Below, piece by piece: positions 2,085 through 57,073 of a DNA stretch of 64,000 nucleotides (position 1 is its first letter; every line of letters begins with the position of its first letter). The DNA comes from Phyllobates terribilis (lineage: Eukaryota). The notes beneath the pieces are model-generated. The model was not told where the DNA came from, made no database searches, and worked only from the letters and a program-made list of their open reading frames with translations. The translations under genes were made by a program, and so were the position numbers. The stretch covers positions 29,450,001-29,514,000 of the forward strand of contig NW_027362762.1 of NCBI RefSeq assembly GCF_046119375.1, given 5' to 3'.

Positions 2085-2599
2085 TGGTTAGCACAGTATG
2101 GTGGCTCAGTGGTTAGCACTGTATGGTGGCTCAGTGGTTAGCACAGTATGGTGGCTCACTGGTTAGCACTGTATGGTGGCTCAGTGGTTAGCACTGTATG
2201 GTGGCTCAGTGGTTAGCACAGTATGGTGGCTCAGTGGTTAGCACTGTATGGTGGCTCAGTGGTTAGCACTGTATGGTGGCTCAGTGGTTAGCACAGTATG
2301 GTGGCTCACTGGTTAGCACAGTATGGTGGCTCACTGGTTAGCACTGTATGGTGGCTCAGTGGTTAGCACTGTATGGTGGCTCAGTGGTTAGCACTGTATG
2401 GTGGCTCAGTGGTTAGCACTGTATGGTGGCTCAGTGGTTAGCACAGTATGGTGGCTCACTGGTTAGCACAGTATGGTGGCTCACTGGTTAGCACTGTATG
2501 GTGGCTCAGTGGTTAGCACTGTATGGTGGCTCAGTGGTTAGCACTGTATGGTGGCTCACTGGTTAGCACTGTATGGTGGCTCAGTGGTTAGCACTGTAG
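2085..2599 (+). repeat. 25-bp tandem array GTGGCTCA(G/C)TGGTTAGCAC(T/A)GTATG, 20 copies plus a partial, made of the SINE 5' A-box
   Basis: Units start at 2101+25n up to 2576; the last unit runs directly into the SINE body. Confidence 0.95.
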
Positions 2600-9491: not shown

Positions 9492-12400
9492 TATCTCCCA
9501 ACGCATGCAGCTTCCAGGACGCCACACACACAGGAGGGGAAGACATCCGAAACGAGTATCTCCCAACGCACGCAGCTTCCAGGACGCCAGACACACAGGA
9601 GGGGAAGACATCCAAAACGAGTATCTCCCAACGCACGCAGCTTCCAGGACTCCACACACACAGGAGGGGAAGACATCCCAAACGAGTATCTCCCAACGCA
9701 CGCAGCTTCCAGGACGCCACACACACAGGAGGGGAAGACATCCGAAACGAGTATCTCCCAACGCACGCAGCTTCCAGGACGCCACACACAGGAGGGGAAG
9801 ACATCCGAAACGAGTATCTCCCAACGCACGCAGCTTCCAGGACGCCACACACACAGGAGGGGAAGACATCCCAAACGAGTATCTCCCAACGCACGCAGCT
9901 TCCAGGACGCCACACACACAGGAGGGGAAGATATCCGAAACGAGTATCTCCCAACGCACTCAGCTTCCAGGACGCCACGCACACAGGAGGGGAAGACATC
10001 CGAAACGAGTATCTCCCAACGCACGCAGCTTCCAGGACGCCACACACACAGGAGGGGAAGACATCCCAAACGAGTATCTCCCAACGCATGCAGCTTCCAG
10101 GACGCCACACACAGGAGGGGAAGACATCCGAAACGAGTATCTCCCAACGCACGCAGCTTCCAGGACGCCACACACACAGGAGGGGAAGACATCCCAAACG
10201 AGTATCTCCCAACGCACGCAGCTTCCAGGACGCCACACACACAGGAGGGGAAGACATCCGAAACGAGTATCTCCCAACGCATGCAGCTTCCAGGACGCCA
10301 CACACAGGAGGGGAAGACATCCGAAACGAGTATCTCCCAATGCACGCAGCTTCCAGGACGCCACGCACACAGGAGGGGAAGACATCCCAAACGAGTATCT
10401 CCCAACGCATGCAGCTTCCAGGACGCCACACACACAGGAGGGGAAGACATCCCAAACGAGTATCTCCCAACGCACGCAGCTTCCAGGACGCCACACACAC
10501 AGGAGGGGAAGACATCTGAAACGAGTATCTCCCAACGCATGCAGCTTCCAGGACGCCACACACAGGAGGGGAAGACATCCGAAACGAGTATCTCCCAATG
10601 CACGCAGCTTCCAGGACGCCACACACACAGGAGGGGAAGACATCCGAAACGAGTATCTCCCAACGCACGCAGCTTCCAGGACGCCACACACACAGGAGGG
10701 GAAGACATCCGAAACGAGTATCTCCCAACGCACGCAGCTTCCAGGACGCCACACACAGGAGGGGAAGACATCCAAAACGAGTATCTCCCAACGCACGCAG
10801 CTTCCAGGACGCCACACACACAGGAGGGGAAGACATCCGAAACGAGTATCTCCCCACGCACGCAGCTTCCAGGACGCCACACACACAGGAGGGGAAGACA
10901 TCCGAAACGAGTATCTCCCAACGCACGCAGCTTCCAGGACGCCACACACACAGGAGGGGAAGACATCCGAAACAAGTATCTCCCAACGCACGCAGCTTCC
11001 AGGACGCCACACACAGGAGGGGAAGACATCCGAAACGAGTATCTCCCCACGCACGCAGCTTCCAGGACGCCACACACAGGAGGGGAAGACATCCGAAACG
11101 AGTATCTCCCAACGCACGCAGCTTCCAGGACACCACACACACAGGAGGGGAAGACATCCGAAACGAGTATCTCCCAACGCACGCAGCTTCCAGGACGCCA
11201 CACACACAGGAGGGGAAGACATCCGAAACGAGTATCTCCCAACGCACGCAGCTTCCAGGACGCCACACACACAGGAGGGGAAGACATCCGAAATGAGTAT
11301 CTCCCAATGCACGCAGCTTCCAGGACGCCACACACACAGGAGGGGAAGATATCCGAAACGAGTATCTCCCAACGCACGCAGCTTCCAGGACGCCACACAC
11401 ACAGGAGGGGAAGACATCCGAAACGAGTATCTCCCAACGCACGCAGCTTCCAGGACGCCACACACACAGGAGGGGAAGACATCCGAAACGAGTATCTCCC
11501 AACGCACTCAGCTTCCAGGACGCCACACACACAGGAGGGGAAGACATCCGAAACGAGTATCTCCCAACGCACTCAGCTTCCAGGACGCCACACACACAGG
11601 AGGGGAAGACATCCGAAACGAGTATCTCCCAATGCACGCAGCTTCCAGGACGCCACACACAGGAGAGGAAGACATCCGAAACGAGTATCTCCCAACGCAC
11701 GCAGCATCCAGGACGCCACACACAGGAGGGGAAGACATCCGAAACGAGTATCTCCCAACGCACGCAGCTTCCAGGACGCCACACACAGGAGGGGAAGACA
11801 TCCGAAACGAGTATCTCCCAACGCACGCAGCTTCCAGGACGCCACACACACAGGAGGGGAAGACATCCGAAACGAGTATCTCCCAACGCACGCAGCTTCC
11901 AGGACGCCACACACACAGGAGGGGAAGACATCCGAAACGAGTATCTCCCAACGCACGCAGCTTCCAGGACGCCACACACACAGGAGGGGAAGACATCCGA
12001 AACGAGTATCTCCCAATGCACGCAGCTTCCAGGACGCCACACACACAGGAGGGGAAGACATCCGAAACGAGTATCTCCCAACGCACGCAGCTTCCAGGAC
12101 GCCACACACACAGGAGGGGAAGACATCCGAAACGAGTATCTCCCAACGCACGCAGCTTCCAGGACGCCACACACACAGGAGGGGAAGACATCCCAAACGA
12201 GTATCTCCCAACGCACGCAGCTTCCAGGACGCCACACACACAGGAGGGGAAGATATCCGAAACGAGTATCTCCCAACGCACTCAGCTTCCAGGACGCCAC
12301 GCACACAGGAGGGGAAGACATCCGAAACGAGTATCTCCCAACGCACGCAGCTTCCAGGACGCCACACACACAGGAGGGGAAGACATCCCAAACGAGTATC

Positions 12401-15297
12401 TCCCAACGCATGCAGCTTCCAGGACGCCACACACAGGAGGGGAAGACATCCGAAACGAGTATCTCCCAACGCATGCAGCTTCCAGGACGCCACACACACA
12501 GGAGGGGAAGACATCCCAAACGAGTATCTCCCAACGCACGCAGCTTCCAGGACGCCACACACACAGGAGGGGAAGACATCCGAAACGAGTATCTCCCAAC
12601 GTATGCAGCTTCCAGGACGCCACACACAGGAGGGGAAGACATCCGAAACGAGTATCTCCCAATGCACGCAGCTTCCAGGACGCCACGCACACAGGAGGGG
12701 AAGACATCCCAAACGAGTATCTCCCAACGCATGCAGCTTCCAGGACGCCACACACACAGGAGGGGAAGACATCCCAAACGAGTATCTCCCAACGCACGCA
12801 GCTTCCAGGACGCCACACACACAGGAGGGGAAGACATCTGAAACGAGTATCTCCCAACGCATGCAGCTTCCAGGACGCCACACACAGGAGGGGAAGACAT
12901 CCGAAACGAGTATCTCCCAATGCACGCAGCTTCCAGGACGCCACACACACAGGAGGGGAAGACATCCGAAACGAGTATCTCCCAACGCACGCAGCTTCCA
13001 GGACGCCACACACACAGGAGGGGAAGACATCCGAAACGAGTATCTCCCAACGCACGCAGCTTCCAGGACGCCACACACAGGAGGGGAAGACATCCAAAAC
13101 GAGTATCTCCCAACGCACGCAGCTTCCAGGACGCCACACACACAGGAGGGGAAGACATCCGAAACGAGTATCTCCCCACGCACGCAGCTTCCAGGACGCC
13201 ACACACACAGGAGGGGAAGACATCCGAAACAAGTATCTCCCAACGCACGCAGCTTCCAGGACGCCACACACAGGAGGGGAAGACATCCGAAACGAGTATC
13301 TCCCCACGCACGCAGCTTCCAGGACGCCACACACAGGAGGGGAAGACATCCGAAACGAGTATCTCCCAACGCACGCAGCTTCCAGGACACCACACACACA
13401 GGAGGGGAAGACATCCGAAACGAGTATCTCCCAACGCACGCAGCTTCCAGGACGCCACACACACAGGAGGGGAAGACATCCGAAACGAGTATCTCCCAAC
13501 GCACGCAGCTTCCAGGACGCCACACACACAGGAGGGGAAGACATCCGAAATGAGTATCTCCCAATGCACGCAGCTTCCAGGACGCCACACACACAGGAGG
13601 GGAAGATATCCGAAACGAGTATCTCCCAACGCACGCAGCTTCCAGGACGCCACACACACAGGAGGGGAAGACATCCGAAACGAGTATCTCCCAACGCACG
13701 CAGCTTCCAGGACGCCACACACACGAGGGGAAGACATCCGAAACGAGTATCTCCCAACGCACTCAGCTTCCAGGACGCCACACACACAGGAGGGGAAGAC
13801 ATCCGAAACGAGTATCTCCCAACGCACTCAGCTTCCAGGACGCCACACACACAGGAGGGGAAGACATCCGAAACGAGTATCTCCCAATGCACGCAGCTTC
13901 CAGGACGCCACACACAGGAGAGGAAGACATCCGAAACGAGTATCTCCCAACGCACGCAGCATCCAGGATGCCACACACAGGAGGGGAAGACATCCGAAAC
14001 GAGTATCTCCCAACGCACGCAGCTTCCAGGACGCCACACACAGGAGGGGAAGACATCCGAAACGAGTATCTCCCAACGCACGCAGCTTCCAGGACGCCAC
14101 ACACACAGGAGGGGAAGACATCCGAAACGAGTATCTCCCAACGCACGCAGCTTCCTGGACGCCACACACACAGGAGGGGAAGACATCCGAAACGAGTATC
14201 TCCCAACGCACGCAGCTTCCAGGACGCCACACACACAGGAGGGGAAGACATCCGAAACGAGTATCTCCCAATGCACGCAGCTTCCAGGACGCCACACACA
14301 CAGGATTTGAAGACATCCGAAACGAGTATCTCCCAACGCACTCAGCTTCCAGGACGCCACACACACAGGAGGGGAAGACATCCGAAACGAGTATCTCCCA
14401 ACGCACTCAGCTTCCAGGACGCCACACACACAGGAGGGGAAGACATCCGAAACGAGTATCTCCCAACGCACTCAGCTTCCAGGACGCCACACACACAGGA
14501 GGGGAAGACATCCGAAACGAGTATCTCCCAGCGCACGCAGCTTCCAGGACGCCACACACAGGAGGGGAAGACATCCAAAACGAGTTTCTCCCAACGCACG
14601 CAGCTTCCAGGACGCCACACACAGGAGGGGAAGACATCCGAAACGAGTATCTCCCAACGCACGCAGCTTCCAGGACGCCACACACACAGGAGGGGAAGAC
14701 ATCCGAAACGAGTATCTCCCAACGCACTCAGCTTCCAGGACGCCACACACACAGGAGGGGAAGACATCCGAAACGAGTATCTCCCAACGCACGCAGCTTC
14801 CAGGACGCCAGACACACAGGAGGGGAAGACATCCGAAACGAGTATCTCCCAACGCACGCAGCTTCAAGGACGCCACACACACAGGAGGGGAAGACATCCG
14901 AAACGAGTATCTCCCAACGCACGCAGCTTCCAGGACGCCAGACACACAGGAGGGGAAGACATCCGAAATGAGTATCTCCCAACGCACTCAGCTTCCAGGA
15001 CGCCACACACACAGGAAGGGAAGACATCCGAAACGAGTATCTCCCAACGCACGCAGCTTCCAGGACGCCACACACACAGGAGGGGAAGACATCCGAAACG
15101 AGTATCTCCCAACGCACGCAGCTTCCAGGACGCCACACACACAGGAGGGGAAGACATCCGAAACGAGTATCTCCCAACGCACTCAGCTTCCAGGACGCCA
15201 CACACACAGGAGGGGAAGACATCCGAAACGAGTATCTCCCAATGCACGCAGCTTCCAGGACGCCACACACACAGGAGGGGAAGACATCCGAAACGAG
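9492..15297. repeat. 65/63-bp tandem satellite, about 90 copies, with a 2.26-2.32 kb higher-order duplication
   Basis: Unit TATCTCCCAACGCACGCAGCTTCCAGGACGCCACACACACAGGAGGGGAAGACATCCGAAACGAG; the 63-bp variant lacks one CA; diagnostic variants recur at offsets 2322 and 2257. Confidence 0.97.
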
Positions 15298-25070: not shown

Positions 25071-27165
25071 ACTGTTATAGGACGTTACACCAGTGAGATG
25101 AGCCAAAAAAGGTGATTTTTGGTAAAAGTCACATGTCTTGAATCTGTCTAATACATCTGGATAAGCAAATTGTCAAAAAAAGAAATAAAAAAACATTTAA
25201 AAAGAAATAAAACTTAACACGTGACACAAATTGTATAAAGAATAAAGCGCAAATACTAAAGAGCTGACAAATAAGAAAATGAATCCAGAAAAGTGAAAAA
25301 CAGCAACTATGAATTGGGAGTCAGAACCTTTGTCCCCAATTCCTCAAAGCGATTCCGGCAAAATTCTGCTGTAAATCGCTTTGAAAATTCACAGAATTGT
25401 TCGTGCAAAATTTCGCGACTTTTAACGTTTTTGAGTCAGTTTCTCCCAGCTCCGTCGAAAAGGCTTACAGGGGCGTAAGAGTACAGCTCGCCTAATTTTG
25501 GACCAGCCGTGTCGTACCTGACTGTGGTAAGATTTGTGGCTTAACGCAGAGAGACGCAGAACACTTCACAACTCGCCTGATTCACTAACATTTATGCGCC
25601 TCACACCCCACACCACCCTCACGAAAGACGCCGGTCTGGATGAATCGGGGTCATAATATGCAGTTGTCATCTCAGATTCTGTACATTCCTGGTGTCAGGA
25701 ACCTGCCCTCGGGGCATCACCGATCTTATGTAACAAAGTCTAATCACCCTGAATGACAAGTTCTACAACTTTCTCATAGACTTTGCTTCTAGAATTCTGC
25801 TCGCTGTCAGAGGATGACAAAACTCTATGTTTACATTTGAAGACTAAAAACCATAACTTGTCCTGAGCTTTACCCGGGGGGGATCGTACCCAGTCCAGAA
25901 ATATTCTCCGATGAAGACTGGACGCCAGCCTGATACATTGTAGCTCACAGAGCATTGTCCAGGCTGGACACAACTGTAACAATTCTGAAGCTGGTAAGAA
26001 ATTGATCAAGGAGGGTTTCGAAAAATTGCAATTGATGTATCAGTCAAAAACATCTAGAAATCCCAAAAATCAGCTCATAGTGGCGAACATAAGATAAAAC
26101 CAGGCAAACACGTGTAACATAGACTCCAAAAAGAAGAATTACAGCTAATGAAAAAAAGTCTAAAAATATCGAAAACAAGACAAAAAATGCAATAAGGAAT
26201 TGGGCCAAAATGACTCCGGAAGATATGTGGAAAAAACACATTGAAGTAAAAAGCAGAAAATTAGTTCAACCACAAATCAAAAAAGTCGCTAATTGAGACG
26301 TATTCATGGCAAAAAACTGATGGAAATGCAGTGATGAATCGGGCCTGAAGTGTGCACATGCCCCAAAGCTTCATATGCAGCTTTAATTTTAGATTTTTTT
26401 CTGCACCTCTCATCATAAAAAAGGCACCAACGGTTCCTCATCAAAATGTGCAGTTTTAATTGTTTTCTGTGTGATTTGTAGGTGATTTTTGTGACTATTG
26501 TAACTGTTTTTCATTAGTTTTTTAATAATTTTCTAGAAATAAAAATCTCCTGACTTGTACCTGTAATAAACAGGAGTAAAGAAATGCAGCGGTCCCTGTC
26601 TGAGACCACCAATGACTGAACCATTTCCTAGATAAGGAACCCTAACCCACATCCGCGCTCTCAGCTCGCAGTCTACAGTCATATTATACGGGGTCCGGAC
26701 ATCAGACTTTAGTGCTCATACTGGATGACCCTGAGTGGTCTTAACTCTTTTACGTGGATATATTGTATATATGGTGGTCTTAAGTCTATCATTTGCTGCT
26801 CTGTTTCTTTGGCCGACCCCTGCATCTACAGTCCTCAACGTTGCCCATTTCTTAATGCTTCTTTAAAGGAGCTTAAAAGGCGCATCACTAAGCCCCAGTC
26901 CGCTGTGAGATCTTGTCCCTGGGGGGAGATGTTGCTGATACATCCCAAACATCCAACCAGTCTGTAAGAATAAGGAATCGAGGAGATGATGATCCGGCCC
27001 TGGAGCCCTGATCTCACATCATCCCGTCTTTCTGGGATCACATGAAGAGACAGAAGGATCCGCACCAGCCTCAAACACAGAAGATATGGTGGAAGTTCTC
27101 CAAGAGGTTTGGCACAACCTCCTGCCGAGATCCTGCATAACCTGTGAACAAGTGACGAGAAGAAG

Positions 27166-30100
27166 TGAAGGCGACGGGCGGTCACCAGATACTGATGATG
27201 GAGGCGACGGGTGGTCACCGGATACTGATGATGCAGGCGACGGGCGGTCACCAGATACTGATGATGCAGGCGACGGGTGGTCACCGGATACTGATGATGG
27301 AGGTGATGGGCGGTCACCAGATACTGATGATGGAGGGGACAGGCAGTCACCAGATACTGATGATGGAGGTGACGGGCGATCACCAGATACTGATGATGGA
27401 GGCGACGGGCGGTCACCAGATACTGATGATGGAGGTGACGGGCGATCACCAGATACTGATGATGGAGGTGACGGGCGGTCACCAGATACTGATGATGCAG
27501 GCGACGGGTGGTCACCTGATGCTGATGATGGATGCAGTGTGCGGTCACCAGATACTAATGATGGAGGTGACGGGCGGTCACCAGATACTGATGATGGAGG
27601 TGACGGGCGGTCACCAGATACTAATGATGGAGGCGACGGGCGGTCACCAGATACTGATGATGGAGGTGACGGGCGATCACCAGATACTGATGATGGAGGT
27701 GACGGGCGGTCACCAGATACTGATGATGGAGGTGACGGGCGATCACCAGATACTGATGATGGAGGTGACGGGCGGTCACCAGATACTGATGATGGAGGCG
27801 ACGGGTGGTCACCGGATGCTGATGATGGAGGCAGTGTGCGGTCACCAGATACTAATGATGGAGGCGACGGGCGGTCACCAGATACTGATGATGGAGGTGA
27901 TGGGCGGTCACCAGATACTGATGATGGAGGTGACGGGCGATCACCAGATACTGATGATGGAGGTGACGGGCGGTCACCAGATACTCATGATGGAGGCGAC
28001 GGGTAGTCACCGGATGCTGATGATGGAGGCAGTGTGCGATCACCAGATACTAATGATGGAGGTGACGGGCGGTCACCAGATACTGATGATGGAGGTGATG
28101 GGCGGAAACCAGACACTGATGATGGAGGTGATGGGCAGTCACCAGACACCGATGATGGAGGTGACGGGCGGTCATCAGATACTGATGATGGAGGTGATGG
28201 GATGTCACCAGACACTGATGATGGTTGTGATGGGCGCTCACCAGAAACTGATGAAGGAGATGACGGGTGGTCACCAGATACTGATGATGGAGGTGATGGG
28301 CGGTCACCAGATACTGATGACTGATGATGGAGGTGATGGACGTTCACCAGATACTGATGATGGAGGCAACGGGCGGTCACCGGATGCTGATGATGGATCC
28401 GACGGGCAGTCACCAGATACTGATGATGGAGGCAATGGGCGGTCACCAGATACTGATGATGGAGGCAACTGGCGGTCACCAGATACTGATGATGGAGGCG
28501 ACGGGCGATCACCAGATACTGATGATGGAGGCGATGGGTGGTCACCGGATGCTGATGATGGAGGCGATGGGCAGTCACCAGTTACTGATGATGGAGTCGA
28601 CGGGCGGTCACCAGATACTGATGATGGAGGTGATGGGCGGTCACCAGAAACTGATGATGGAGGTGATGGGCGCTCACCAGAAACTGATAAAGGAGATGAC
28701 GGGTGGTCACCAGTTACTGATGATGGAGGTGATGGGCGGTCACCAGATTCTGATGATTGATGATGGAGGTAATGGGCGTTCACCAGATACTGATGATGGA
28801 GGCGACGGGCGGTCACCAGATACTGATGACGGAGACGGGCGGTCACCAGATACTGATGATGGAGGAGATGGGCGGTCACCAGATACTGATGATGTAGGGG
28901 ACGGGCGGTCACCGGATGCTGATGATGGATCCGACGGACAGTCACCAGATACTGATGATGGAGGCAACGGGCAGTCACCAGATACTGATGATGGAGGCAA
29001 CTGGCGGTCACCAGATACTGATGATGGAGGCAACGGGTGGTCACCAGATACTGATGATGGAGGGGACGGGCGGTCACCAGATACTGATGATGGAGGGGAT
29101 GGGCGGTCACCAGATACTGATGATGGAAGCGATGGGTGGTCACCAGTTACTGATGTAGGGGACGGGCAGTCACCGGATGCTTATGATGGATCCGACGGGC
29201 AGTCACCAGCTACTGATGATGGAGGCAATGGGCGGTCACCAGATACTGATGATGGAGGCAACTGGCGGTCACCAGATACTGATGATGGAGGCGACGGGCG
29301 ATCACCAGATACTGATGATGGAGGCGACGGGTGATTAACCAATGCTGATGATGGAGGCGACGGGCAGTCACCAGTTACTGATGATGGAGTCGACGGGCAG
29401 TCACCAGATACTGATGATAGATGTGATGGGCGGTCACCAGAAACTGATGATGGAGGTGATGGGCGCTCACCAGAAACTGATGAAGGAGATGACGGGTGGT
29501 CACCAGATACTGATGATGGAGGTGATGGGCGGTCACCAGATACTGATGATTGATGATGGAGGTAATGGGCCTTCACCAGATACTGATGATGGAGGCGACG
29601 GGCGGTCACCAGATATTGATGACGGAGACGGGCGGTCACCAGATACTGATGATGGAGGAGATGGGCAGTCACTAGATACTGATGAAGGAGGTGATGGGTG
29701 ATCACTAGATACTGATAACAGACATGGGCGGTCACCAGATATTGATGATGGAGGAGATGGGCGGTCACTAGATACTGATGATGGAGGTGATGGAAACTGA
29801 TAATAAAGATGATGGGCAGTCACCGGATACTGATGATGGAGGCAGTGTGCGGTCACCAGATACTAATGATGGAGGAGACGGGCGGTCACCAGATACTGAT
29901 GATGGAGGTGATGGGCGGTCACCAGATACTGATGATGGAGGTGACGGGCGATCACCAGATACTGATGATGGAGGTGACGGGCGGTCACCAGATACTGATG
30001 ATGGAGGCGACGGGTAGTCACCAGATGCTGATGATGGAGGCAGTGTGCGATCACCAGATACTAATGATGGAGGTGACGGGCGGTCACCAGATACTGATGA

Positions 30101-33100
30101 TGGAGGTGATGGGCGGAAACCAGACACTGATGATGGAGGTGATGGGCAGTCACCAGACACTGATGATGGAGGTGATGGGCGGTCATCAGATACTGATGAT
30201 GGAGGTGATGGGATGTCACCAGACACTGATGATGGTTGTGATGGGCGCTCACCAGAAACTGATGAAGGAGATGACGGGTGGTCACCAGATACTGATGATG
30301 GAGGTGATGGGCGGTCACCAGATACTGATGACTGATGATGGAGGTGATGGACGTTCACCAGATACTGATGATGGAGGCAACGGGCGGTCACCGGATGCTG
30401 ATGATGGATCCGACGGGCAGTCACCAGATACTGATGATGGAGGCAATGGGCGGTCACCAGATACTGATGATGGAGGCAACTGGCGGTCACCAGATACTGA
30501 TGATGGAGGCGACGGGCGATCACCAGATACTGATGATGGAGGCGATGGGTGGTCACCGGATGCTGATGATGGAGGCGATGGGCAGTCACCAGTTACTGAT
30601 GATGGAGTCGACGGGCGGTCACCAGATACTGATGATGGAGGTGATGGGCGGTCACCAGAAACTGATGATGGAGGTGATGGGCGCTCACCAGAAACTGATA
30701 AAGGAGATGACGGGTGGTCACCAGTTACTGATGATGGAGGTGATGGGCGGTCACCAGATTCTGATGATTGATGATGGAGGTAATGGGCGTTCACCAGATA
30801 CTGATGATGGAGGCGACGGGCGGTCACCAGATACTGATGACGAAGACGGGCGGTCACCAGATACTGATGATGGAGGAGATGGGCGGTCACCAGATACTGA
30901 TGATGTAGGGGACGGGCGGTCACCGGATGCTGATGATGGATCCGACGGACAGTCACCAGATACTGATGATGGAGGCAACGGGCAGTCACCAGATACTGAT
31001 GATGGAGGCAACTGGCGGTCACCAGATACTGATGATGGAGGCGACGGGTGGTCACCAGATACTGATGATGGAGGGGACGGGCGGTCACCAGATACTGATG
31101 ATGGAGGGGATGGGCGGTCACCAGATACTGATGATGGAAGCGATGGGCGGTCACCAGTTACTGATGTAGGGGACGGGCAGTTACCGGATGCTTATGATGG
31201 ATCCGACGGGCAGTCACCAGCTACTGATGATGGAGGCAATGGGCGGTCACCAGATACTGATGATGGAGGCAACTGGCGGTCACCAGATACTGATGATGGA
31301 GGCGACGGGCGATCACCAGATACTGATGATGGAGGCGACGGGTGATTAACCAATGCTGATGATGGAGGCGACGGGCAGTCACCAGTTACTGATGATGGAG
31401 TCGACGGGCAGTCACCAGATACTGATGATGGATGTGATGGGCGGTCACCAGAAACTGATGATGGAGGTGATGGGCGCTCACCAGAAACTGATGAAGGAGA
31501 TGACGGGTGGTCACCAGATACTGATGATGGAGGTGATGGGCGGTCACCAGATACTGATGATTGATGATGGAGGTAATGGTCGTTCACCAGATACTGATGA
31601 TGGAGGCGACGGGCGGTCACCAGATATTGATGACGGAGACGGGCGGTCACCAGATACTGATGATGGAGGAGATGGGCAGTCACTAGATACTGATGAAGGA
31701 GGTGATGGGTGGTCACTAGATTATGATGACAGACATGGGCGGTCACCAGATATTGATGATGGAGGAGATGGGCGGTCACTAGATACTGATGATGGAGGTG
31801 ATGGAAACTGATAATAAAGATGATGGGCAGTCACCGGATACTGATGATGGAGGTGACGGGCAGTCACCAGTTACTGATGATGGATGCAATAGGCGGTCAC
31901 CAGATACTGATGATGGATATGAAAGGTGGTCACCAGAAACTGATGATGGAGGCGAAGAGCGGTCACGAGTTATTGATGATGGAGGTGATGGGTGGTCACC
32001 AGTTACTGATGATGGAGTCGACGAGCACTCACCAGAAAATGATGATGGAGATGAAGGGCGGTCACCAGATACTGATGATAGAGATGGGCGGTCACCAGAT
32101 ACTGATAATCGAGGAGATGGGCGGTCACTAGATACTGATGATGGAGGTGATGGGCAGTCACCAGATATTGATGATGGAGGCGACGGGCAGTCACCAGATA
32201 TTGATGATGGAGGCGACGTGCGGTCACCAGTTACTGATGATGGAGGTAATGGGCAGCCATCAGTTACTGATGATGGAGGCGACGGGCAGTCACCAGATGC
32301 TAATAATGGAATTGACAAGCGCTCACCAGAAACTGATAATGGAGATGATGGGCAATCACGATAGACTGATGTTGGAGGTGACTGGCAGTCACCAGATACT
32401 GATGATGGATGCAAAGGGCGGTCACCAGATACTGATGATGGAGGCGATGGGTGGTCACCGGATGCTGATGATGGAGGAAACGGGCAGTCACCAGTTACTG
32501 ATGATGGAGTCGACGGGCGGTCACCAGATACTGATGATGGAGGTGATGGGCGGTCACCAGAAACTGATGATGGAGGTGATGGGCGCTCACCAGAAACTGA
32601 TAAAGGAGATGACGGGTGGTCACCAGTTACTGATGATGGAGGTGATGGGCGGTCACCAGATTCTGATGATTGATGATGGAGGTAATGGGCGTTCACCAGA
32701 TACTGATGATGGAGGCGACGGGCGGTCACCAGATACTGATGACGGAGACGGGCGGTCACCAGATACTGATGATGGAGGAGATGGGCGGTCACCAGATACT
32801 GATGATGTAGGGGATGGGCGGTCACCGGATGCTGATGATGGATCCGACGGACAGTCACCAGATACTGATGATGGAGGCAACGGGCAGTCAACAGATACTG
32901 ATGATGGAGGCAACTGGCGGTCACCAGATACTGATGATGGAGGCGACGGGTGGTCACCAGATACTGATGATGGAGGGGACGGGCGGTCACCAGATACTGA
33001 TGATGGAGGGGATGGGCGGTCACCAGATACTGATGATGGAAGCGATGGGCGGTCACCAGTTACTGATGTAGGGGACGGGCAGTCACCGGATGCTTATGAT

Positions 33101-35757
33101 GGATCCGACGGGCAGTCACCAGCTACTGATGATGGAGGCAATGGGCGGTCACCAGATACTGATGATGGAGGCAACTGGCGGTCACCAGATACTGATGATG
33201 GAGGCGACGGGCAATCACCAGATACTGATGATAGAGGCGACGGGTGATTAACCAATGCTGATGATGGAGGCGACGGGCAGTCACTAGTTACTGATGATGG
33301 AGTCGACGGGCGGTCACCAGATACTGATGATGGATGTGATGGGCGGTCACCAGAAACTGATGATGGAGGTGATGGGCGCTCACCAGAAACTGATGAAGGA
33401 GATGACGGGTGGTCACCAGATACTGATGATGGAGGTGATGGGCGGTCACCAGATACTGATGACTGATGATGGAGGTAATGGGCGTTCACCAGATACTGAT
33501 GATGGAGGCGACGGGCGGTCACCAGATATTGATGACGGAGACGGGCGGTCACCAGATACTGATGATGGAGGAGATGGGCAGTCACTAGATACTGATGAAG
33601 GAGGTGATGGGTGGTCACTAGATACTGATGACAGACATGGGCGGTCACCAGATATTGATGATGGAGGAGATGGGCGGTCGCTAGATACTGATGATGGAGG
33701 TGATGGAAACTGATAATAAAGATGATGGGCAGTCACCGGATACTGATGATGGAGGTGATGGGCAGTCACCAGTTACTGATGATGGATGCAATAGGCGGTC
33801 ACCAGACACTGATGATGGAGATGAAAGGTGGTCACCAGAAACTGATGATGGAGGCGAAGAGCGGTCACGAGCTATTGATGATGGAGGTGATGGGTGGTCA
33901 CCAGTTACTGATGATGGAGTCGACGTGCACTCACCAGAAAATGATGATGGAGATGAAGGGCGGTCACCAGATACTGATGATAAAGATGGGCGGTCACCAG
34001 ATACTGATAATGGAGGAGATGGGCGGTCACTAGATACTGATGATGGAGGTGATGGGCAGTCACCAGATATTGATGATGGAGGCGACGGGCAGTCACCAGA
34101 TATTGATGATGGAGGCAACGTGCGGTCACCAGTTACTGATGATGGAGGCAATGGGCAGCCATCAGTTACTGATGATGGAGGCGACGGGCAGTCACCAGAT
34201 GCTAATAATGGAATCGACAAGCGCTCACCAGAAACTGATAATGGAGATGATGGGCAATCACGATAGACTGATGTTGGAGGTGATTGGCAGTCACCAGATA
34301 CTGATGATGGATGCAAAGGGCGGTCACCAGATACTGATGATGGAGGAGATGGGTGGTCACAAGATACTGATGATGGAGGTGACGGGCGGTCATTAGACAT
34401 TGATGATGGAGGCAACAAGCGTTTACCAGATACTGATGATAGAAGCGACGAGCGGTTATCTGATACTGATGATGGAGACGACGAGCGATCACCAGATATT
34501 GATGATGGAGGTGAAGGGTAGTCACCAGATACTGATGATGGAGGCGATGGGTGGTCACCAGATACTGATGATGGAGGCGACGGGCGGTCACCAGATATTG
34601 ATGATGGAGGTGAAGGGTAGTCACCAGATACTGATGATGGATGCAAAGGGCGGTCACCAGATACTGATGATGGAGGAGATGGGTAGTCACCAGATACTGA
34701 TGATGGAGGTGACGGGCAGTCATTAGACATTGATGATGGAGGCGACAAGCGGTTACCAGATACTGATGATGGAGGTGACGAGCGGTTACCTGATAATGAT
34801 GATGGAGACGTCGAGCGATCACCAGATATTGATGATGGAGGTGAAGGGTAGTCACCAGATACTGATGATGGAGGTGACGGGCGGTCATCAGATATTGATG
34901 ATGGAGGTGATGGGCAATTACCAGATATTGATGATGGAGGCAACGGGCAGTCACCAGATATTGATGATGGAGGCGATGGGCCGTCACCAGAAACTGATAA
35001 TTGAGGTGACGGGCGGTCATGATAGACTGATGTTGGAGGTGACTGTGTCACGCCAGGTGTAAGTGCAACACAGAGGGAAAAGGGAGAGAGAGCCCAGACA
35101 CTCCAAATGTGCACACGGCCTCAAGCTCCAGAGAGGACGAAGTACTGCTCCTGCTAAGCTTCACAAGTAGAATGAATATAACCGGCGACGCCCTCTCAGA
35201 CACACCAGGCATATATACACCCAGGCCAGAGAGCTAATTAGCCAGAGGAAGGTAGTCACTCGGTCCTAAAGACAGCCTCCTATCTAAGCAGCTGTCTGCA
35301 ATGCCAAATGTGGAGATCTCCTGCAACCCACAGCAGGGCGACTGTCTGTCACCTCTGACACACCCGTGACAGACTGGCAGTCACTAGTTACTGATAATGG
35401 AAGTGACGGGTGCTCACCAGATACTGATGATGGAGGTGACGGGTGGTCACCAGATACTGACGATTGAGGCGATGGGCCGTCACCAGTTACAGATGATGCA
35501 GGCAACGGGTGGTCACCAGATACTGATGATGGAAGAGATGGGTGGCCACCAGATACTGATGATGAAGGAGATGAGTGGTCACCAGATACTGATGTTGGGG
35601 GTGACGAGCGGTCATTAGACATTGATGATGGAGGCGACGAGCAGTTACCAGATACTGATGATGGAGATGACGAGCGATCACCAGGTTCTGATGATGGAGG
35701 CAATGGACTGTCACTAGATACTGCTGATGGAGGTGACAGGTGGTCAGCAGATACTGA
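27166..35757. repeat. 33-bp tandem satellite, about 250 copies, with 2011/1902-bp higher-order blocks
   Basis: Unit GGGCGGTCACCAGATACTGATGATGGAGGTGAC; marker GGAAACTGATAATAAAG at 29792, 31803 and 33705. Confidence 0.97.
35046..35371. mobile_element. Small solo LTR (326 bp) inserted in the 33-bp array
   Basis: TGTCACG...CGTGACA inverted termini; 5-bp TSD GACTG (35041-35045, 35372-35376); an uninterrupted copy of the target unit exists at about 32361-32390. Confidence 0.85.
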
Positions 35758-36140
35758 GGGGATTTACATTTCTCTTCTCTTAGTTCACTTTGCATTTTGT
35801 GAATTGATGTCTTCTATGTATGAAGTTTCTTGCTCTGCAACATTTATCCCAACCTGGTTAATACTTTTGCACAGTGTTGTATATGGTGGTCTTATGTGGA
35901 CACTACATGGTGGTCATTTAGTTTATATGGCTGGGGCAGGCAGAAGTAGAAGACATATTGTCGCTTACACATAATATTTTTCAGATTCTTGTTCCCCTCC
36001 CTTCTGTAATATTTCCCCCCGCTGAGGCCCGTCAGGCACTGTCATCTTTACACCCTAATGGGGACATTCACTGTCTTCATCGTGTTTCTAACCAGTTTCT
36101 CCACCTTGTTTTAATCTTTGTCTGCATTCAGATACGTTAC

Positions 36141-36572: not shown

Positions 36573-38146
36573 CCAGCTCCTCTCCCAGCTTCTCAACCAG
36601 CTCCTCTCTCAGCTCCTCTCCCAGCTCAGCACCTCTCCCAGCTCCTCTCTCAGCTCCTCTCCCAGCTCCTCACCCAGCTCTTCTCCCAGCTCTTCTCCCA
36701 GCTCTTCTCCCAGCTCCTCTCCCAGCTCCTCACCCAGCTCCCCTCCCAGCTCCTCACTCAGCTCCTCTCCCAGCTCCTCTCCCACCTCCTCACCCAGCTC
36801 CTCTCCCAGCTCCTCAGCCAGCTCCCCTCCCAGCTCCTCACTCAGCTCCTCTCCCAGCTCCTCTCACAGCTTCTCTCTCAGCTCCTCTATCAGCTCTTCT
36901 CCCAGCTCCTCACCCAGCTCCTCTCTCAGCTCATCTCCCAGCTCCTCTCCCAGCTTCTCTTCCAGCTCCTTTCCCAGCTCCTCTGTCAGCTCCTCTCCCA
37001 GCTCCTCTCCCAGCTCTTCACCCAGCTCTTCACCCAGCTCCTCACCCAGCTCCTCACCCAGCTTCTCTCCCAGCTCCTCTCCCAGCTTCTCTTCCAGCTC
37101 CTCTCCCAGCTTCTCTTCCAGCTCCTTTCCCAGGTCCTCTCCCAGCTCCTCTCACAGTTCCTCTCCCAGCTCCTCTCCCAGCTCTTCACCCAACTCTTCA
37201 CCCAGCTCCTCACCCAGCTCCTCACCCAGCTCCTCTCCCATCTTCTCTCCCAGCTCCTCTCCCAGCTCATCTCCCAGATTCTCTCCCAGCTCCTCTCCCA
37301 GCTCCTCTCCCATCTTCTCTCCCAGCTCTTCTCCCATCTTCTCTCCCAGCTCCTCTCCCAGCTCCTCTTCCAGCTCCTCTTCCAGCTCCTCTCGCAGCTC
37401 CTCTCCCAGCTCATCTCCCAGCTCTTCTCCCACCTCTTCTCTCAGCTTCTCTCCCAGCTCCTCTCTCAGCTCAGCTCCTCTCTCAGCTCCTCTCCCAGCT
37501 TCTCTCCCAGCTTCTCTCCCAGCTTCTCTCCCAGCTCCTCTCAGCTCAGCTCCTCTCCCAGCTCCTCTCTCAGCTCCTCTCCCAGCTCCTCTCTCAGCTC
37601 CTCTCCCAGCTCCTCTCTCAGCTCCTCTCCCAGCTCCTCTCTCAGCTTCTCTCCCAGCTCCTCTCCCAGCTCCTCTCCCCACTCCTCTCCCAGCTCCTTT
37701 CTCAGCTCCTCTCCCAGCTCCTCTCCCAGCTCCTCTCCCAGCTCCTCTCCCAGCATCTCTCCCAGCTCCTCTCCCCACTCCTCTCCCCGCTCCTCTCCCA
37801 GCTTCTCTCTCAGCTCCTCTCCCAGCTCCTCTCCCAGCTTCTCTCTCAGCTCCTCTCCCAGCTCCTCTCCCAGCAACTCTCCCAGCTCCTTTCCCAGAAC
37901 CTCTCCCAGCTTCTCTCCCAGCTCCTCTCCCAGCTCCTCTCACAGCTTCTCTCCCAGCTCCTCTCCCAGCTCCTCTCCCAACTTCTCTCCCAGCTTCTCT
38001 CCCAGCTCCTCTCTCAGCTCCTCTTCCATCTTCTCTCCCAGCTCCTCTCCCAGTTCCTCTCCCCGCTCCTTTCCCAGCTCCTCTCCCAGCTTCTCTCCCA
38101 GCTCCTCTCCCAGCTCCTCTTCCAGCTCCTCTCCCAGCTTCTCTCC
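36573..38146. repeat. 12-bp minisatellite (CAGCTCCTCTCC)n, about 130 copies
   Basis: Seen directly; a remnant of about 1.5 units continues at 49877-49895 beyond the Gypsy insertion. Confidence 0.97.
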
Positions 38147-38147
38147 C

Positions 38148-39585: not shown

Positions 39586-39684
39586 CACATCTGCAGGAAG
39601 GACGCCGAGGGAATGGAGGACAGGTGAGAATCATCTTTTTTTTTTTCTATTTTATGTGTGTGAAGAACAACACAGGGGGCACAG

Positions 39685-41670
39685 AGCCACAACATGGGGA
39701 CCTGGATGGGGCACATAGCCACAGGATGGGGACCTGGATGGGGCACATAGCCACAGGATGGGGACCTGGATGGGGCACATAGCCACAGGATGGGGACCTG
39801 GATGGGGCACATAGCCACAGGATGGGGACCTGGATGGGGCACATAGCCACAAGATGGGGACCTGGATGGGGCACATAGCCACAAGAGGGGACCTGGATGG
39901 GGCACATAGCCACAAGAGGGGACCTGGATGGGGCACATAGCCACAAGATGGGGACCTGGATGGGGCACATAGCCACAAGATGGGGACCTGGATGGGGCAC
40001 ATAGCCACAAGAGGGGACCTGGATGGGGCACATAGCCACAAGAGGGGACCTGGATGGGGCACATAGCCACAAGAGGGGACCTGGATGGGGCACATAGCCA
40101 CAAGAGGGGACCTGGATGGGGCACATAGCCACAGGATGGGGACCTGGATGGGGCACATAGCCACAGGATGGGGACCTGGATGGGGCACATAGCCACAGGA
40201 TGGGGACCTGGATGGGGCACAGAGCCACAAGAGGGGACCTGGATGGGGACCTGGATGGGGCACATAGCCACAAGAGGGGACCTGGATGGGGCACATAGCC
40301 ACAAGATGGAGACCTGGATGGGGCACATAGTCACAAGATGGGGACCTGGATGGGGCACAGAGCCACAAGATGGGGACCTGGATGGGGCACAGAGCCACAA
40401 GATGGGGACCAGAGCCACAACATGGGGACCTGGATGGGGCACATAGCCACAGGATGGGGACCTGGATGGGGCACATAGCCACAAGAGGGGACCTGGATGG
40501 GGCACATAGCCACAAGATGTGGACCTGGATGGGGCACATAGCCACAAGATGTGGACCTGGATGGGGCACATAGCCACAAGATGGGGACCTGGATGGGGCA
40601 CAGAGCCACAAGATGGGGACCTGGATGGGGCACAGAGCCACAAGATGGGGACCTGGATGGGGCACAGAGCCACAGGATGGGGACCTGGATGGGGCACATA
40701 GCCACAAGAGGGGACCTGGATGGGGCACATAGCCACAAGATGGGGACCTGGATGGGGCACATAGCCACAAGATGGGGACCTGGATGGGGCACATAGCCAC
40801 AAGATGGGGACCTGGATGGGGCACATAGCCACAGGATGGGGACCTGGATGGGGCACAGAGCCTCAAGATGTGGACCTGGATGGGGCACAGAGCCACAAGA
40901 TGTGGACCTGGATGGGGCACATAGCCACAAGATGGGGACCTGGATGGGGCACAGAGCCACAAGATGGGGACCAGAGCCACAAGATGGGGACCTGGATGGG
41001 GCACATAGCCACAAGATGGGGACCTGGATGGGGCACATAGCCACAGGATGGGGACCTGGATGGGGCACATAGCCACAGGATGGGGACCTGGATGGGGCAC
41101 ATAGCCACAGGATGGGGACCTGGATGGGGCACATAGCCACAAGATGGGGACCTGGATGGGGCACATAGCCACAAGATGGGGACCTGGATGGGGCACAGAG
41201 CCACAAGATGGGGACCTGGATGGGGCACAGAGCCACAAGATGGGGACCTGGATGGGGCACAGAGCCACAAGATGGGGACCTGGATGGGGCACAGAGCCAC
41301 AAGATGGGGACCTGGATGGGGCACAGAGCCACAAGATGGGGACCTGGATGGGGCACAGAGCCACAAGATGGGGACCTGGATGGGGCACAGAGCCACAAGA
41401 TGGGGACCTGGATGGGGCACAGAGCCACAAGATGGGGACCTGGATGGGGCACAGAGCCACAAGATGGGGACCAGAGCCACAAGATGGGGACCTGGATGGG
41501 GAACATTGCCACAGGATGGGGACCTGGATGGGGCACATAGCCCCAAGATGGGGACCTGGATGAGGCACATTAGTACAAGATGGGCGCCAGGATGGGGAAC
41601 GTTGCTACAGGATGGGGACCTGGATGGGGCACATTAGTACAAGATGGGGACTTGGATGGGGAACATTACT
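39685..41670. repeat. 32-bp G-rich minisatellite, about 60 copies
   Basis: Unit ATGGGGACCTGGATGGGGCACATAGCCACAAG, with 31-bp and 19-bp variants; decays at the right end. Confidence 0.96.
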
Positions 41671-42403
41671 ACAAGATGTTTTCCATTATTACTATATGAT
41701 GCTAATTGTAAGACAATATTACTGTATGTGGCCAATTGGGGGAAATAAAATTGTAAAAAAAATAAAAAAATAAAATAAAGCATGAAAAAATATTGGGCAC
41801 TAAAAATGCTGTTTTATATGTAAACTAAAGTAAACACAAAAAAGTGCACGTTTATTATCGCCACATCCATAACGACCCAAGCCATAAAAAAATAAACACG
41901 GCAAAAATGTTCAAAAGGTGTATACAAAAAAAATGGTATCACTAAAAATGTCACATTGAACAAAGAATGCGGCCCCCCAAATTCAAATTTTTTCCATGTG
42001 TGGCCCATATACCCAGCCGAGTTTGAGACCCCTGCAATACATGAACATTAGAATAGTACAAACACTACAGTCTTTATAGGTCACGGTATCGTCCGTAACC
42101 AAGTGTCCATTCCACTGAAGATGTAGTTTGAGGGACCCGTCCCAAACCCTCCACGGAGGCCCTGGGGTGGCTACAGGGCATTGATGATCCGGATGTTGGA
42201 CCACGTCTTCAGCCACCTCCAAGGGGTTTTTGTTCTGTGGTCTGGCACAAAAGGGGCACTTTGCAGGTGCAACTATTTACAGGCAAAGTTTTTTGTTATC
42301 TATTGTCCATAACCTAGAAAAGTCTCTGAAACCTGTCAGGTAACTGGAAAAACAGGTTAAATGCACACATAAAAAATTTCAACATTACAGTTATACATTA
42401 CAC

Positions 42404-55443: not shown

Positions 55444-57073
55444 CAATACAGACCAAAAGTTTGGACACACCTTCTCATTTAAATTTTTTTCTGTATTTTA
55501 ATGACTATGAAAATTGTACATTCACACTGAAGGCATCAAAACTATGAATTACCACATGTGGAATTATATACTTAACAAAAAAGTGTGAAATAACTGAAAA
55601 TATGTCTTATATTCTAGGTTCTTCAAAGTAGCCGCCTTTTGCTTTGATGACTGCTTTGCACACTCTTGGCATTCTCTTGATGAGCTTCAAGAGGTAGTCA
55701 CCGGAAATGGTCTTCACTTCACAGGTGTGCCCTGTCAGGTTTAATAAGTGGGATTTCTTGCCTTATAAATGGGGTTGGGACCATCAGTTGTGTTGTGCAG
55801 AAGTCTGGTGGATACACAGCTGATAGTCCTACTGAATAGACTGTTAGAATTTGTATTATGGCAAGAAAACAGCAGCTAAGTAAAGAAAAACGAGTGGCCG
55901 TCATTAATTTAAGAAATGAAGGTCAGTCAGTGCGAAAAATTGGGAAAACTTTGAATGTGTCCCCAAGTGCAGTTGCAAAAACCATCAAGCGCTACAAAGA
56001 AACTGGCTCACATGAGGACCGCCCCAGGAAAGGAAGACCAAGAGTCACCCCTACTTCTGAGGATAAGTTTATCTGAGTCACCAGCCTCAGAAATCGCAGG
56101 TTAACAGCAGCTCAGATTAGAGACCAGGTCAATGCCACACAGAGTTCTAGCAGCAGACACATCTCTACAACAACTGTTAAGAGGAGACTTTGTGCAGCAG
56201 GCCTTCAAGGTAAAATAGCTGCTAGGAAACCACTGCTAAGGACAGGCATCAAGCAGAAGAGACTTGTTTGGGCTAAAGAACACAAGGAATGGACATTAGA
56301 CCAGTGGAAATCTGTGCTTTGGTCTGATGAGCCCAAATTTGAGATCTTTGGTTCCAACCACCGTGTCTTTGTGCGACGCAGAAAAGGTGAACGGATGGAC
56401 TCTACATGCCTGGTTCCCACCGTGAAGCATGGAGGAGGAGGTGTGATGGTGTGGGGGTGCTTTGCTGGTGACACTGTTGGGGATTTATTCAAAATTGAAG
56501 GCATACTGAACATGCATGGTTACCACAGCATCTTGCAGCGGCATACTATTCCATCCGGTTTGCGTTTAGTTGGACCACCATTTATTTTTCAACAGGACAA
56601 TGACCCCAAACACACCTCCAGGCTGTGTAAGGGCTATTTGACCAAGAAGGAGAGTGATGGGGTGCTACGTCAGATGACCTGGCATCCACAGTCACCAGAC
56701 CTGAACCCAATCGAGATGGTTTGGGGTGAGCTGGACCGCAGAGTGAAGGCAAAAGGGCCGACAAGTTCTAAGCATCTCTGGGAACTCCTTCAAGATTGTT
56801 GGAAGACCATTTCCAGTGACTACCTCTTGAAGCTCATCAAGAGAATGCCAAGAGTGTGCAAAGCAGTCATCAAAGCAAAAGGTGGCTACTTTGAAGAACC
56901 TAGAATATAAGATATATTTTCAGTTGTTTCACACTCTTTTGTTAAGTATATAATTTCACATGTGTTAATTCATAGTTTTGATGCCTTCAATGTGAATGTA
57001 CAATTTTCAAAGTCATGAAAATACAGAAAAATCTTCAAATGAGAAGGTGTGTCCAAACTTTTGGTCTGTACTG
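55444..57073 (+). mobile_element. Full-length Tc1-like transposon, DD38E (Intruder-type)
   Basis: TIRs CA(A/G)TACAGACCAAAAGTTTGGACACACCTTCTCATT at both ends; TA TSD (55442-55443, 57074-57075); 1630 bp. Confidence 0.95.
55858..56910 (+). pseudogene. Tc1-like transposase, 350 codons, single premature stop
   Basis: Continuous frame except TGA at 56074-56076; catalytic WSDE, QQD and NPIE, with 38 residues between the second D and E. Confidence 0.93.

What the first reader, a model, noticed from the sequence alone, without database searches (positions are those of the whole stretch)
26975..35881. An 8.6-kb satellite born from the last codons of a Tc1 transposase
The Tc1 C-terminus (SPDL...EVWHNL...RR) runs straight into the first unit, and Tc1 3' UTR, TIR and TA resume right after the last. 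The unit (GGAGGCGACGGGCGGTCACCAGATACTGA) matches the typical Tc1 ending LKAKGGHTKY-stop, and some units retain GCAAAGGG, reading DAKGGH (32410, 34314, 34641). The transposase at 56860-56890 ends similarly (KAKGGY). Both junctions and the parent sequence are readable, a clear case of a satellite arising from transposase coding sequence.
Basis: partly seen in the sequence, partly recalled or inferred. Interest (0 to 1): 0.75.

Follow-up and report, generated by a model that had tools for sequence, protein, structure and literature searches.

The report
Tandem array grown from Tc1 transposase tail
A dead Tc1 transposon in this (probably poison-frog) genome has amplified its last nine codons and stop codon into about 250 tandem 33-base copies; the origin is unusually easy to read, but it is an ordinary, probably functionless case of repeat DNA arising from a transposon.

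Summary

**The array.** A 33-bp tandem array of about 251 units runs from 27169 to 35757. A 336-bp non-repeat insert breaks it at 35044-35379.

**The flanks.** I fetched three real reference elements of the flanking Tc1 family from metagenome contigs (L012, L022, L036). L022 has an intact 341-aa transposase.
- The left flank (26966-27167) is collinear with their coding sequence, at 78-79% identity.
- The first unit is their last 9 codons plus stop: 23 of 28 bases match, with one 2-bp gap.
- The array ends on the stop codon at 35755-35757.
- The 3' UTR, terminal inverted repeat and TA follow at 35758-35881, at 74-76% identity.
- The unit's best match anywhere in the 1.6-kb element is the stop-codon region. 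Only 2 of 1000 shuffled units score as well.

**New points.**
- The source segment lies inside the family's roughly 207-bp terminal inverted repeat.
- About half of the array comes from two recent 2-kb block duplications (98.6-99.2% identical).
- 46% of unit variation is CpG decay, so the 'retained GCAAAGGG' units are weak evidence.
- A Ranitomeya imitator gene model carries the same damaged Tc1 remnant and the same repeat in a different genomic context.

**Context.** Other unchecked notes from this scan report similar arrays on other DNA of this genome.

**Verdict.** This is a new member of a known kind, transposon-derived tandem DNA.

The parts
26768..26782 (+). Left copy of an exact 15-bp direct repeat (TATATGGTGGTCTTA) just outside the composite Tc1 remnant
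   Evidence: the 15-mer occurs only twice in the 64-kb window, here and at 35880-35894. Chance expectation is 0.12 matches.
26784..26942 (-). Inverted internal fragment of the same Tc1 family (reference element positions 466-624, N-terminal coding region)
   Evidence: 77% identity over 161 bp to the L022 element on the minus strand. tblastn matches aa 24-63.
26966..27167 (+). 3' part of the Tc1 transposase coding sequence (reference positions about 1198-1418). It is decayed, with several frameshifts and an 11-bp deletion of the codons I-D-A-V just before the array
   Evidence: Alignment A1: 78-79% identity to L012, L022 and L036.
27168..27195 (+). First unit, which is the transposase's own last 9 codons plus stop (K-A-K-G-G-H-T-K-Y-stop in the references)
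   Evidence: 23 of 28 bases match the reference tail, with one 2-bp gap. It is contiguous with the upstream coding sequence.
27169..35043 (+). Main 33-bp tandem array, 239 units, consensus AGGCGACGGGCGGTCACCAGATACTGATGATGG. It contains three roughly 2-kb blocks that are near-identical
   Evidence: Block pairs: 27840-29810 vs +2011 (99.2%), 30520-32430 vs +1902 (98.6%).
35044..35379 (.). Non-repeat insert that splits one unit. Its right end holds an inverted copy of 13 nt of the unit. Identity unknown
   Evidence: no other copy in the window; no Rfam match.
35380..35757 (+). Distal 11.5 units of the same array, more diverged. The last unit ends on the stop codon TGA at 35755-35757
35758..35879 (+). 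Tc1 3' UTR and right terminal inverted repeat (reference positions 1449-1588), ending CAGTGTTG
   Evidence: Alignment A2: 74-76% identity to the references.
35880..35894 (+). TA target dinucleotide (35880-35881) and the right copy of the 15-bp direct repeat

Best explanation
The array is a transposon-derived minisatellite. Its founder unit was the last nine codons, the stop codon and a few neighbouring bases of a Tc1 transposase gene. That segment also lies inside the element's roughly 207-bp terminal inverted repeat.

**Shown:**
- The flanks are one Tc1 family in collinear order.
- The first unit is the coding tail itself.
- The last unit ends on the stop codon and is followed directly by the 3' UTR.
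- All units share a 2-bp deletion relative to the coding tail.
- About 4 kb of the array comes from two recent duplications of roughly 2-kb blocks.
- Nearly half of the unit variation is CpG decay.

**Inferred:**
- The first duplication arose by replication slippage or unequal exchange between short direct repeats that bracket the segment in intact elements. ATTGAT occurs twice, 40 bp apart, and TTGA twice, 29 bp apart.
- Small deletions then fixed a 33-bp period.
- Unequal sister-chromatid exchange grew and partly homogenised the array.

The host copy is a dead, rearranged fragment. The array most likely has no function.
For: - **Array:**
- **Reference elements:** searches give real elements of the family. 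L022 has an intact 341-aa open reading frame. The L012 open reading frame matches Pfam DDE_3 at 51.8 bits against a cut-off of 28.6.
- **Junction alignments:**
- **Identity:** flanks are 74-79% identical to the references and the first unit is 81%.
- **Unit against the whole element:** a unit dimer aligned to the 1585-bp element has its best hit at positions 1404-1446. The stop codon ends at 1445. Only 2 of 1000 shuffled units reach that score anywhere on either strand.
- **Long terminal repeat:** 207-238 bp, and it includes the coding tail.
- **Block duplications:**
- **CpG decay:** 282 of 612 differences fall at 6 of 33 positions.
- **Not coding:** eleven units of 40 or 55 bp break every reading frame.
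- **Second locus:** a Ranitomeya imitator model, P0001, has the same out-of-frame Tc1 remnant and the same 11-aa repeat.
Against: - The references come from metagenome contigs of unknown host.
- No consensus of this genome's own Tc1 copies could be built.
- The exact breakpoints of the first duplication cannot be recovered. Six of the 33 bases (TGATGG) can be derived either from the codons just upstream or from the first bases of the 3' UTR.
Confidence: 0.88

Rival explanations
1. The array was not born at this locus. It arose earlier in another copy of the Tc1 family, possibly a still mobile one, since a duplication that starts after the first stop codon need not damage the gene. It reached this place by transposition or segmental duplication. 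The origin from the coding tail still holds; only the birthplace differs.
For: - P0001 from Ranitomeya imitator carries the same Tc1 remnant with the same net 1-bp deletion and the same 33-bp-period repeat.
- Its upstream part, a LINE fragment, is absent from the window.
- A 15-bp exact direct repeat flanks the whole composite here.
- Unchecked notes from this scan report other arrays from Tc1 last codons in this genome.
Against: - The copy here has no left terminal repeat within 7 kb upstream and is rearranged, so it could not move as it stands now.
- No array-bearing element with two ends was seen.
- The species of the window is unknown, so P0001 could simply be a diverged orthologue or paralogue.
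Confidence: 0.3
2. An unrelated minisatellite expanded or inserted by chance at the end of a Tc1 gene, and its likeness to the coding tail is coincidence.
For: The unit differs from the reference tail at 5 of 28 bases plus a 2-bp gap. It also carries 6 bases with no unique counterpart.
Against: - No separate copy of the 30-nt coding tail exists on either side of the array. The units themselves occupy its place, in phase at both junctions.
- The best match of the unit in the whole element is exactly that site. Only 2 of 1000 shuffles score as well anywhere.
Confidence: 0.03
3. The repeat is a protein-coding tandem-repeat exon (G-D-G-R-S-P-D-T-D-D-G, 11 aa per unit) of a real gene, as the Ranitomeya gene model suggests.
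For: - The period is 33 bp, or 11 codons.
- Open reading frames of up to 531 aa run through the array.
- P0001 is an annotated protein that reads the same repeat.
Against: - Eight 40-bp and three 55-bp units shift the frame.
- P0001 is a chimera of a LINE fragment, an out-of-frame Tc1 remnant and the repeat. It has no Pfam domain.
- There is no protein-family signal in the Atlas; all scores are below 0.9.
- The variation is CpG decay, not codon-structured.
Confidence: 0.02
4. Part of the array's length, in particular the three near-identical 2-kb blocks, is an assembly artefact.
For: The blocks are 98.6-99.2% identical, and tandem arrays are prone to mis-assembly. No reads could be laid on the region.
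Against: The blocks differ by 16-27 substitutions each and have different lengths (2011 and 1902 bp). That pattern fits real duplications better than a duplicated read layout.
Confidence: 0.1

Closest known systems
miDNA4, a Tc1/mariner MITE of Xenopus tropicalis that carries a satellite motif (Scalvenzi and Pollet 2014, as summarised in PMC12628747 and PMC12054243)
   Same: - A frog Tc1/mariner-type element with an internal tandem array of variable length.
- Short direct repeats beside the motif are proposed to drive expansion.
- Long arrays can outlive the element's ends.
   Different: - miDNA4 is a non-coding MITE thought to have captured a pre-existing repeat.
- Here the unit is the autonomous element's own last codons and stop, and both parent junctions are still readable.
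Xstir arrays derived from the Xmix MITE in Xenopus (Hikosaka and Kawahara 2004, as summarised in PMC12628747 and Table 1 of PMC9659126)
   Same: - Tandem repeats derived from internal or terminal-repeat sequence of a DNA transposon in a frog.
- Element, array and composite forms coexist.
   Different: - The source is a MITE terminal repeat, and the proposed mechanism is stem-loop processing between neighbouring elements.
- Here a single element fragment is the source, and the unit hairpin is not significant.
Tetris foldback transposon and its satellite in Drosophila virilis (PMC4079207)
   Same: Tandem repeats inside long terminal inverted repeats of a DNA transposon supply the building blocks of a satellite.
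   Different: - Tetris repeats are a normal part of its terminal repeats and the satellite is genome-wide.
- Here the intact family has a single copy of the segment, and the genome-wide abundance is unknown.
Satellites that contain transposon coding sequence: chicken HinfI/CR1 ORF2, Phodopus PROsat/L1 ORF2 (Table 1 and section 2.2 of PMC9659126)
   Same: Part of a transposon open reading frame became the monomer of a tandem array.
   Different: - Those are retrotransposon reading frames with long monomers.
- Here the source is a DNA transposon, the monomer is 33 bp, and it spans the stop codon.

Membership tests
Tc1-like element (Tc1/mariner superfamily), the host of the array | DDE transposase of the Tc1/mariner type | tested here: met
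   - The reference L012 open reading frame matches Pfam DDE_3 at 51.8 bits, cut-off 28.6.
- L022 has an intact 341-aa open reading frame.
- The window fragment is too decayed for Pfam but is 78-79% identical in DNA to these references.
Tc1-like element (Tc1/mariner superfamily), the host of the array | Terminal inverted repeats beginning CAGT and flanked by a TA target duplication | tested here: inconclusive
   - The right end is present...CAGTGTTG followed by TA at 35880-35881.
- The references have both ends.
- No left end was found within 7 kb upstream in the window, so only one end and one TA can be checked.
Tc1-like element with IR/DR-type long terminal repeats (as in Sleeping Beauty) | Long terminal repeats of about 200 bp, each with an outer and an inner transposase-binding direct repeat | tested here: inconclusive
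   - Long repeats of 207-238 bp are present in the references.
- The candidate inner repeat, 198-213 bp from the end, resembles the outer one no better than shuffles do: score 9 against a null of 7.4 +/- 1.2 with maximum 13.
Transposon-derived satellite or minisatellite DNA | Head-to-tail array whose monomer is homologous to a segment of a transposon | tested here: met
Satellite DNA in the strict sense | High copy number at several loci, in long arrays independent of the parent element | tested here: inconclusive
   - One array of 8.6 kb is still bounded by its Tc1.
- One further locus is known through the Ranitomeya protein P0001.
- The window holds no other copy.
- The genome itself could not be searched and reads were not available.
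- By unit length (33 bp) it is a minisatellite.

The most novel reading that the evidence does not exclude
The stop-codon segment inside the long terminal repeat of this Tc1 family may be a recurrent seeding site for tandem arrays in poison-frog genomes. Because the first repeat unit keeps the stop codon, array-bearing elements could stay coding-competent. They could then carry the arrays to new loci, making Tc1 both nursery and vector of satellites in these very large genomes.
Probability: 0.2. Interest if true: 0.6.

Novelty: new member of a known kind. Interest (0 to 1): 0.38.

Why it matters
Tandem DNA arising from transposons is well documented. Usually only the likeness between monomer and element survives. 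Here the parent gene, both junctions, the microhomologies that could have started the duplication, and later growth by block duplication can all be read at one locus. That makes it a clean teaching case.

It also adds an autonomous Tc1 coding tail to the list of source segments. That list is dominated by terminal repeats and untranslated regions (PMC9659126). If the many similar notes in this genome hold up, Tc1 elements would be a systematic source of tandem DNA in frogs with giant genomes. Tc1 makes up about 6.6% of the Dendrobates tinctorius assembly (PMC11152451).

On its own the locus is most likely functionless.

Tried and rejected
- **Self-BLAST of the flanks and the 336-bp insert.** No other copy in the window.
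- **Word-index protein searches.** I used the open reading frame that starts in the Tc1 remnant, the 42-aa in-frame piece, and P0001 residues 338-380. None found an intact relative.
- **Exhaustive search with the 42-aa piece.** It found only P0001.
- **DNA for the P0001 locus.** Not available because the sample file is too large.
- **A 3' UTR pattern in metagenome and viral contigs.** Nothing found.
- **The tail pattern in prokaryotic genomes.** Nothing found.
- **Left terminal repeat.** Not found upstream.
- **An earlier alignment.** It stretched Tc1 homology leftwards to 26852. BLAST shows this was forced. That stretch is an inverted internal Tc1 piece.
- **Unit hairpin GGTGAC/GTCACC.** Folding is no better than for shuffled sequence (z = -1.2 and -1.1).
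- **Codon-position bias of flank differences.** None: 23, 12 and 14 differences at positions 1, 2 and 3.
- **Gradient of ancestral bases along the array.** None.
- **Rfam, protein Atlas and a literature search for the tail peptide or the terminal repeat.** Nothing found.
- **Homology between P0001 upstream of residue 339 and the window.** None.
Full report
**1. Observation**

Tandem Repeats Finder reports a 33-bp array at 27169-35043. It has 239.2 copies, 82% matches and 3% indels, with consensus AGGCGACGGGCGGTCACCAGATACTGATGATGG. A further 11.5 copies lie at 35380-35757.

A 22-nt core motif with up to 3 mismatches occurs 220 times. All hits are on the + strand, all lie inside 27180-35709, and none is elsewhere in the window. 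Of the 232 intervals between successive anchor-motif matches, 196 are 33 bp. The rest are 30, 40, 55, 63 or 66 bp.

The two stretches are separated by 336 bp of non-repeat sequence at 35044-35379, which splits one unit.

**2. The flanks**

The window holds no second copy of either flank, so a reference had to come from elsewhere.

- Three word-index protein searches found no intact relative.
- The exhaustive search with the 42-aa in-frame piece at 27012-27137 found one protein, P0001.
This gave 36 loci, all Tc1-like C-termini.
- Three of them (L012, L022, L036) have an upstream protein sequence that matches the window's broken reading and P0001: ...GVLEVMVWPPQSPDLNIIESVWDYMKRQKD...

L012 holds a 1585-bp element with both terminal repeats. 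Its open reading frame matches Pfam DDE_3 above the curated cut-off. L022 holds a 1588-bp element with an intact 341-aa transposase.

**3. The junctions**

*Left junction, alignment A1.* Window 26966-27167 is collinear with the last 250 nt of the coding sequence at 78-79% identity. It carries several 1-bp indels and an 11-bp deletion that removes the codons I-D-A-V.

The next 28 nt (27168-27195) align to the references' last 30 nt, AAG GCA AAG GGT GGT CAC ACC AAA TAT TGA. There are 23 matches, 5 substitutions and one 2-bp gap. This is the first unit of the array.

*Right junction, alignment A2.* The last unit ends on TGA at 35755-35757. Window 35758-35879 aligns to the 3' UTR and terminal repeat at 74-76% identity, down to CAGTGTTG. 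TA follows at 35880-35881.

In the references nothing but the 30-nt tail lies between the two flank homologies. In the window the array occupies exactly that place, in phase at both ends.

**4. Is the unit's likeness to the tail more than chance?**

I aligned a unit dimer to the whole L012 element on both strands. The best hit is at element positions 1404-1446, and the stop codon ends at 1445. Only 2 of 1000 shuffled units reach that score anywhere. That the best site is also the site predicted by the flanks adds further weight.

The identity of the first unit to the tail (81%) is in line with that of the flanks. This is what one expects if units and flanks have decayed together.

**5.

(a) *The family has long terminal inverted repeats.* The left and right ends of L012, L022 and L036 match over 207-238 bp. 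This includes the last 22 or so codons, because the stop codon lies 140 bp from the right end. The source of the array is therefore both coding sequence and terminal-repeat sequence. A possible inner binding repeat just upstream of the array is not statistically supported.

(b) *The host Tc1 is not a whole element.* Window 26784-26942 is an inverted piece of the same family (element positions 466-624, 77% identity). It abuts the 3' fragment, which starts at element position 1198. No left terminal repeat lies within 7 kb upstream.

(c) *An exact 15-mer flanks the composite.* TATATGGTGGTCTTA occurs only twice in the window, at 26768-26782 and 35880-35894, just outside the two ends of this composite. 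Tc1 integration duplicates only TA, so this is unexplained.

(d) *The array has higher-order structure.*
- 27840-29810 repeats at +2011 bp with 16 differences in 1971 bp.
- 30520-32430 repeats at +1902 bp with 27 differences in 1911 bp.
- About 4 kb of the array is therefore the product of two recent block duplications.

(e) *Much of the variation is CpG decay.* 282 of 612 differences from the unit consensus are CpG transitions at the three CpGs of the unit.
- Units that look ancestral, such as GCAAAGGG or GGGTGG, can arise by decay of the CpG-rich consensus.
- The three GCAAAGGG units share one 42-nt context, and two are the same unit in duplicated blocks.
- I do not count them as evidence of retention.

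**6. A second locus**

P0001 is CAJ0915565.1, an unnamed protein product of Ranitomeya imitator from assembly GCA_958301615.1. Residues 339-389 read the same Tc1 remnant. This includes the passage from the true frame (DHMKRQKD) into the same wrong frame (TQKIW...FGTTSC). That requires the same net 1-bp deletion as in the window.

Residues 390-481 read an 11-aa repeat, GDGGDRWSPDTDD alternating with GDGGNGWSPNTGD. This is the same 33-bp period and the same 2-bp-deleted form of the tail. The SPNT units imply CCA AAY, which is the ancestral A where all 196 33-bp window units have G. This is inferred from the protein, not read from DNA.

The LINE-derived N-terminal 338 residues of P0001 have no counterpart in the window. 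The Tc1 part of P0001 keeps GVLEVM, closer to the references than the window's GIEEMM. The array-bearing, already damaged Tc1 copy therefore exists in at least two genomic contexts. The window's species is not known. DNA of that locus could not be fetched.

**7. Mechanism**

*Shown:* the positions, phase and homology described above; the block duplications; the CpG decay; and the absence of a maintained reading frame. Eight 40-bp and three 55-bp units break every frame. P0001 has no Pfam domain and there is no Atlas signal.

*Inferred:* in intact elements the segment is bracketed by short direct repeats. ATTGAT occurs in the codons I-D and again across the stop codon, 40 bp apart. TTGA occurs 29 bp apart (sequence shown).
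- Slippage or unequal exchange between such repeats would give a first tandem duplication of 29-40 bp.
- Small deletions, among them the shared 2-bp one, would then set the 33-bp period.
- The six bases TGATGG at the unit junction can be aligned either to the codons just upstream or to the start of the 3' UTR, so the exact breakpoints stay open.
- Growth to about 250 units would follow by unequal exchange. This is the standard two-stage model reviewed in PMC12628747.

The + strand is G-rich (GC skew 0.35). The unit contains a 6-bp inverted repeat, but folding is no better than for shuffled sequence.

**8. Comparison with what is known**

Reviews list many tandem arrays that arose from transposons, mostly from terminal repeats and untranslated regions and sometimes from reading frames of retrotransposons (PMC9659126, section 2.2 and Table 1; PMC12628747, section 4).

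In frogs the nearest cases are the Tc1/mariner MITE miDNA4 of Xenopus tropicalis and Xstir/Xmix of Xenopus laevis. Neither involves the coding tail of an autonomous element. A full-text search for the tail peptide or the terminal repeat found no paper. The Dendrobates tinctorius genome paper, which reports Tc1 at 6.57% of the assembly, does not mention tandem repeats or satellites.

This is therefore a new member of a known kind.

**9. Earlier notes of this scan**

Searches of the scan's notes list many first-reader notes on other pieces of this genome about arrays from Tc1 last codons, with 71-bp and 33-bp units. One followed-up case was judged ordinary and functionless. These are leads that I could not test. 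They fit the idea that the phenomenon recurs in this genome.

**10. Limits**

- The references are from metagenome contigs of unknown host.
- The genome itself could not be searched for other copies.

Noticed in passing
window 26784-26942 (minus strand): An inverted internal fragment of the same Tc1 family (element positions 466-624, 77% identity) abuts the 3' Tc1 fragment. This would fit an internal inversion or two broken copies placed head to head.
   Followed up: partly
window 26768-26782 and 35880-35894: The exact 15-mer TATATGGTGGTCTTA occurs only at these two places. They lie just outside both ends of the composite Tc1-plus-array. This is far longer than the TA duplication that Tc1 makes, and it is unexplained.
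   Followed up: partly
window 35044-35379: A 336-bp non-repeat insert splits one unit. Its right end carries an inverted 13-nt copy of the unit and a 9-bp perfect hairpin. There is no other copy in the window and no Rfam match.
   Followed up: partly
L012, L022, L036 (metagenome contigs): Elements of this Tc1 family have terminal inverted repeats of 207-238 bp that include the last 22 or so codons. The coding tail is therefore present twice per element, once in reverse. L016, from another family, also has the tail on both strands.
   Followed up: partly
window 55858-56910: A second Tc1 family ends KAKGGYFEEPRI-stop. It is 47% identical in protein to the L022 transposase over 338 residues. A further fragment of it lies at 55610-55714 on the minus strand.
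   Followed up: no
window 2085-2598, 9492-15297, 36573-38147, 39676-41678: The window holds four more tandem arrays, with units of 25, 65, 12 and 32 bp. The 12-bp array starts about 700 bp to the right of the Tc1 end. The region is unusually rich in tandem DNA.
   Followed up: no
P0001 (Ranitomeya imitator CAJ0915565.1): This annotated protein is a chimera of a LINE reverse-transcriptase N-terminal fragment, an out-of-frame Tc1 remnant and the translated 33-bp repeat. It is very likely a spurious gene model.
   Followed up: partly
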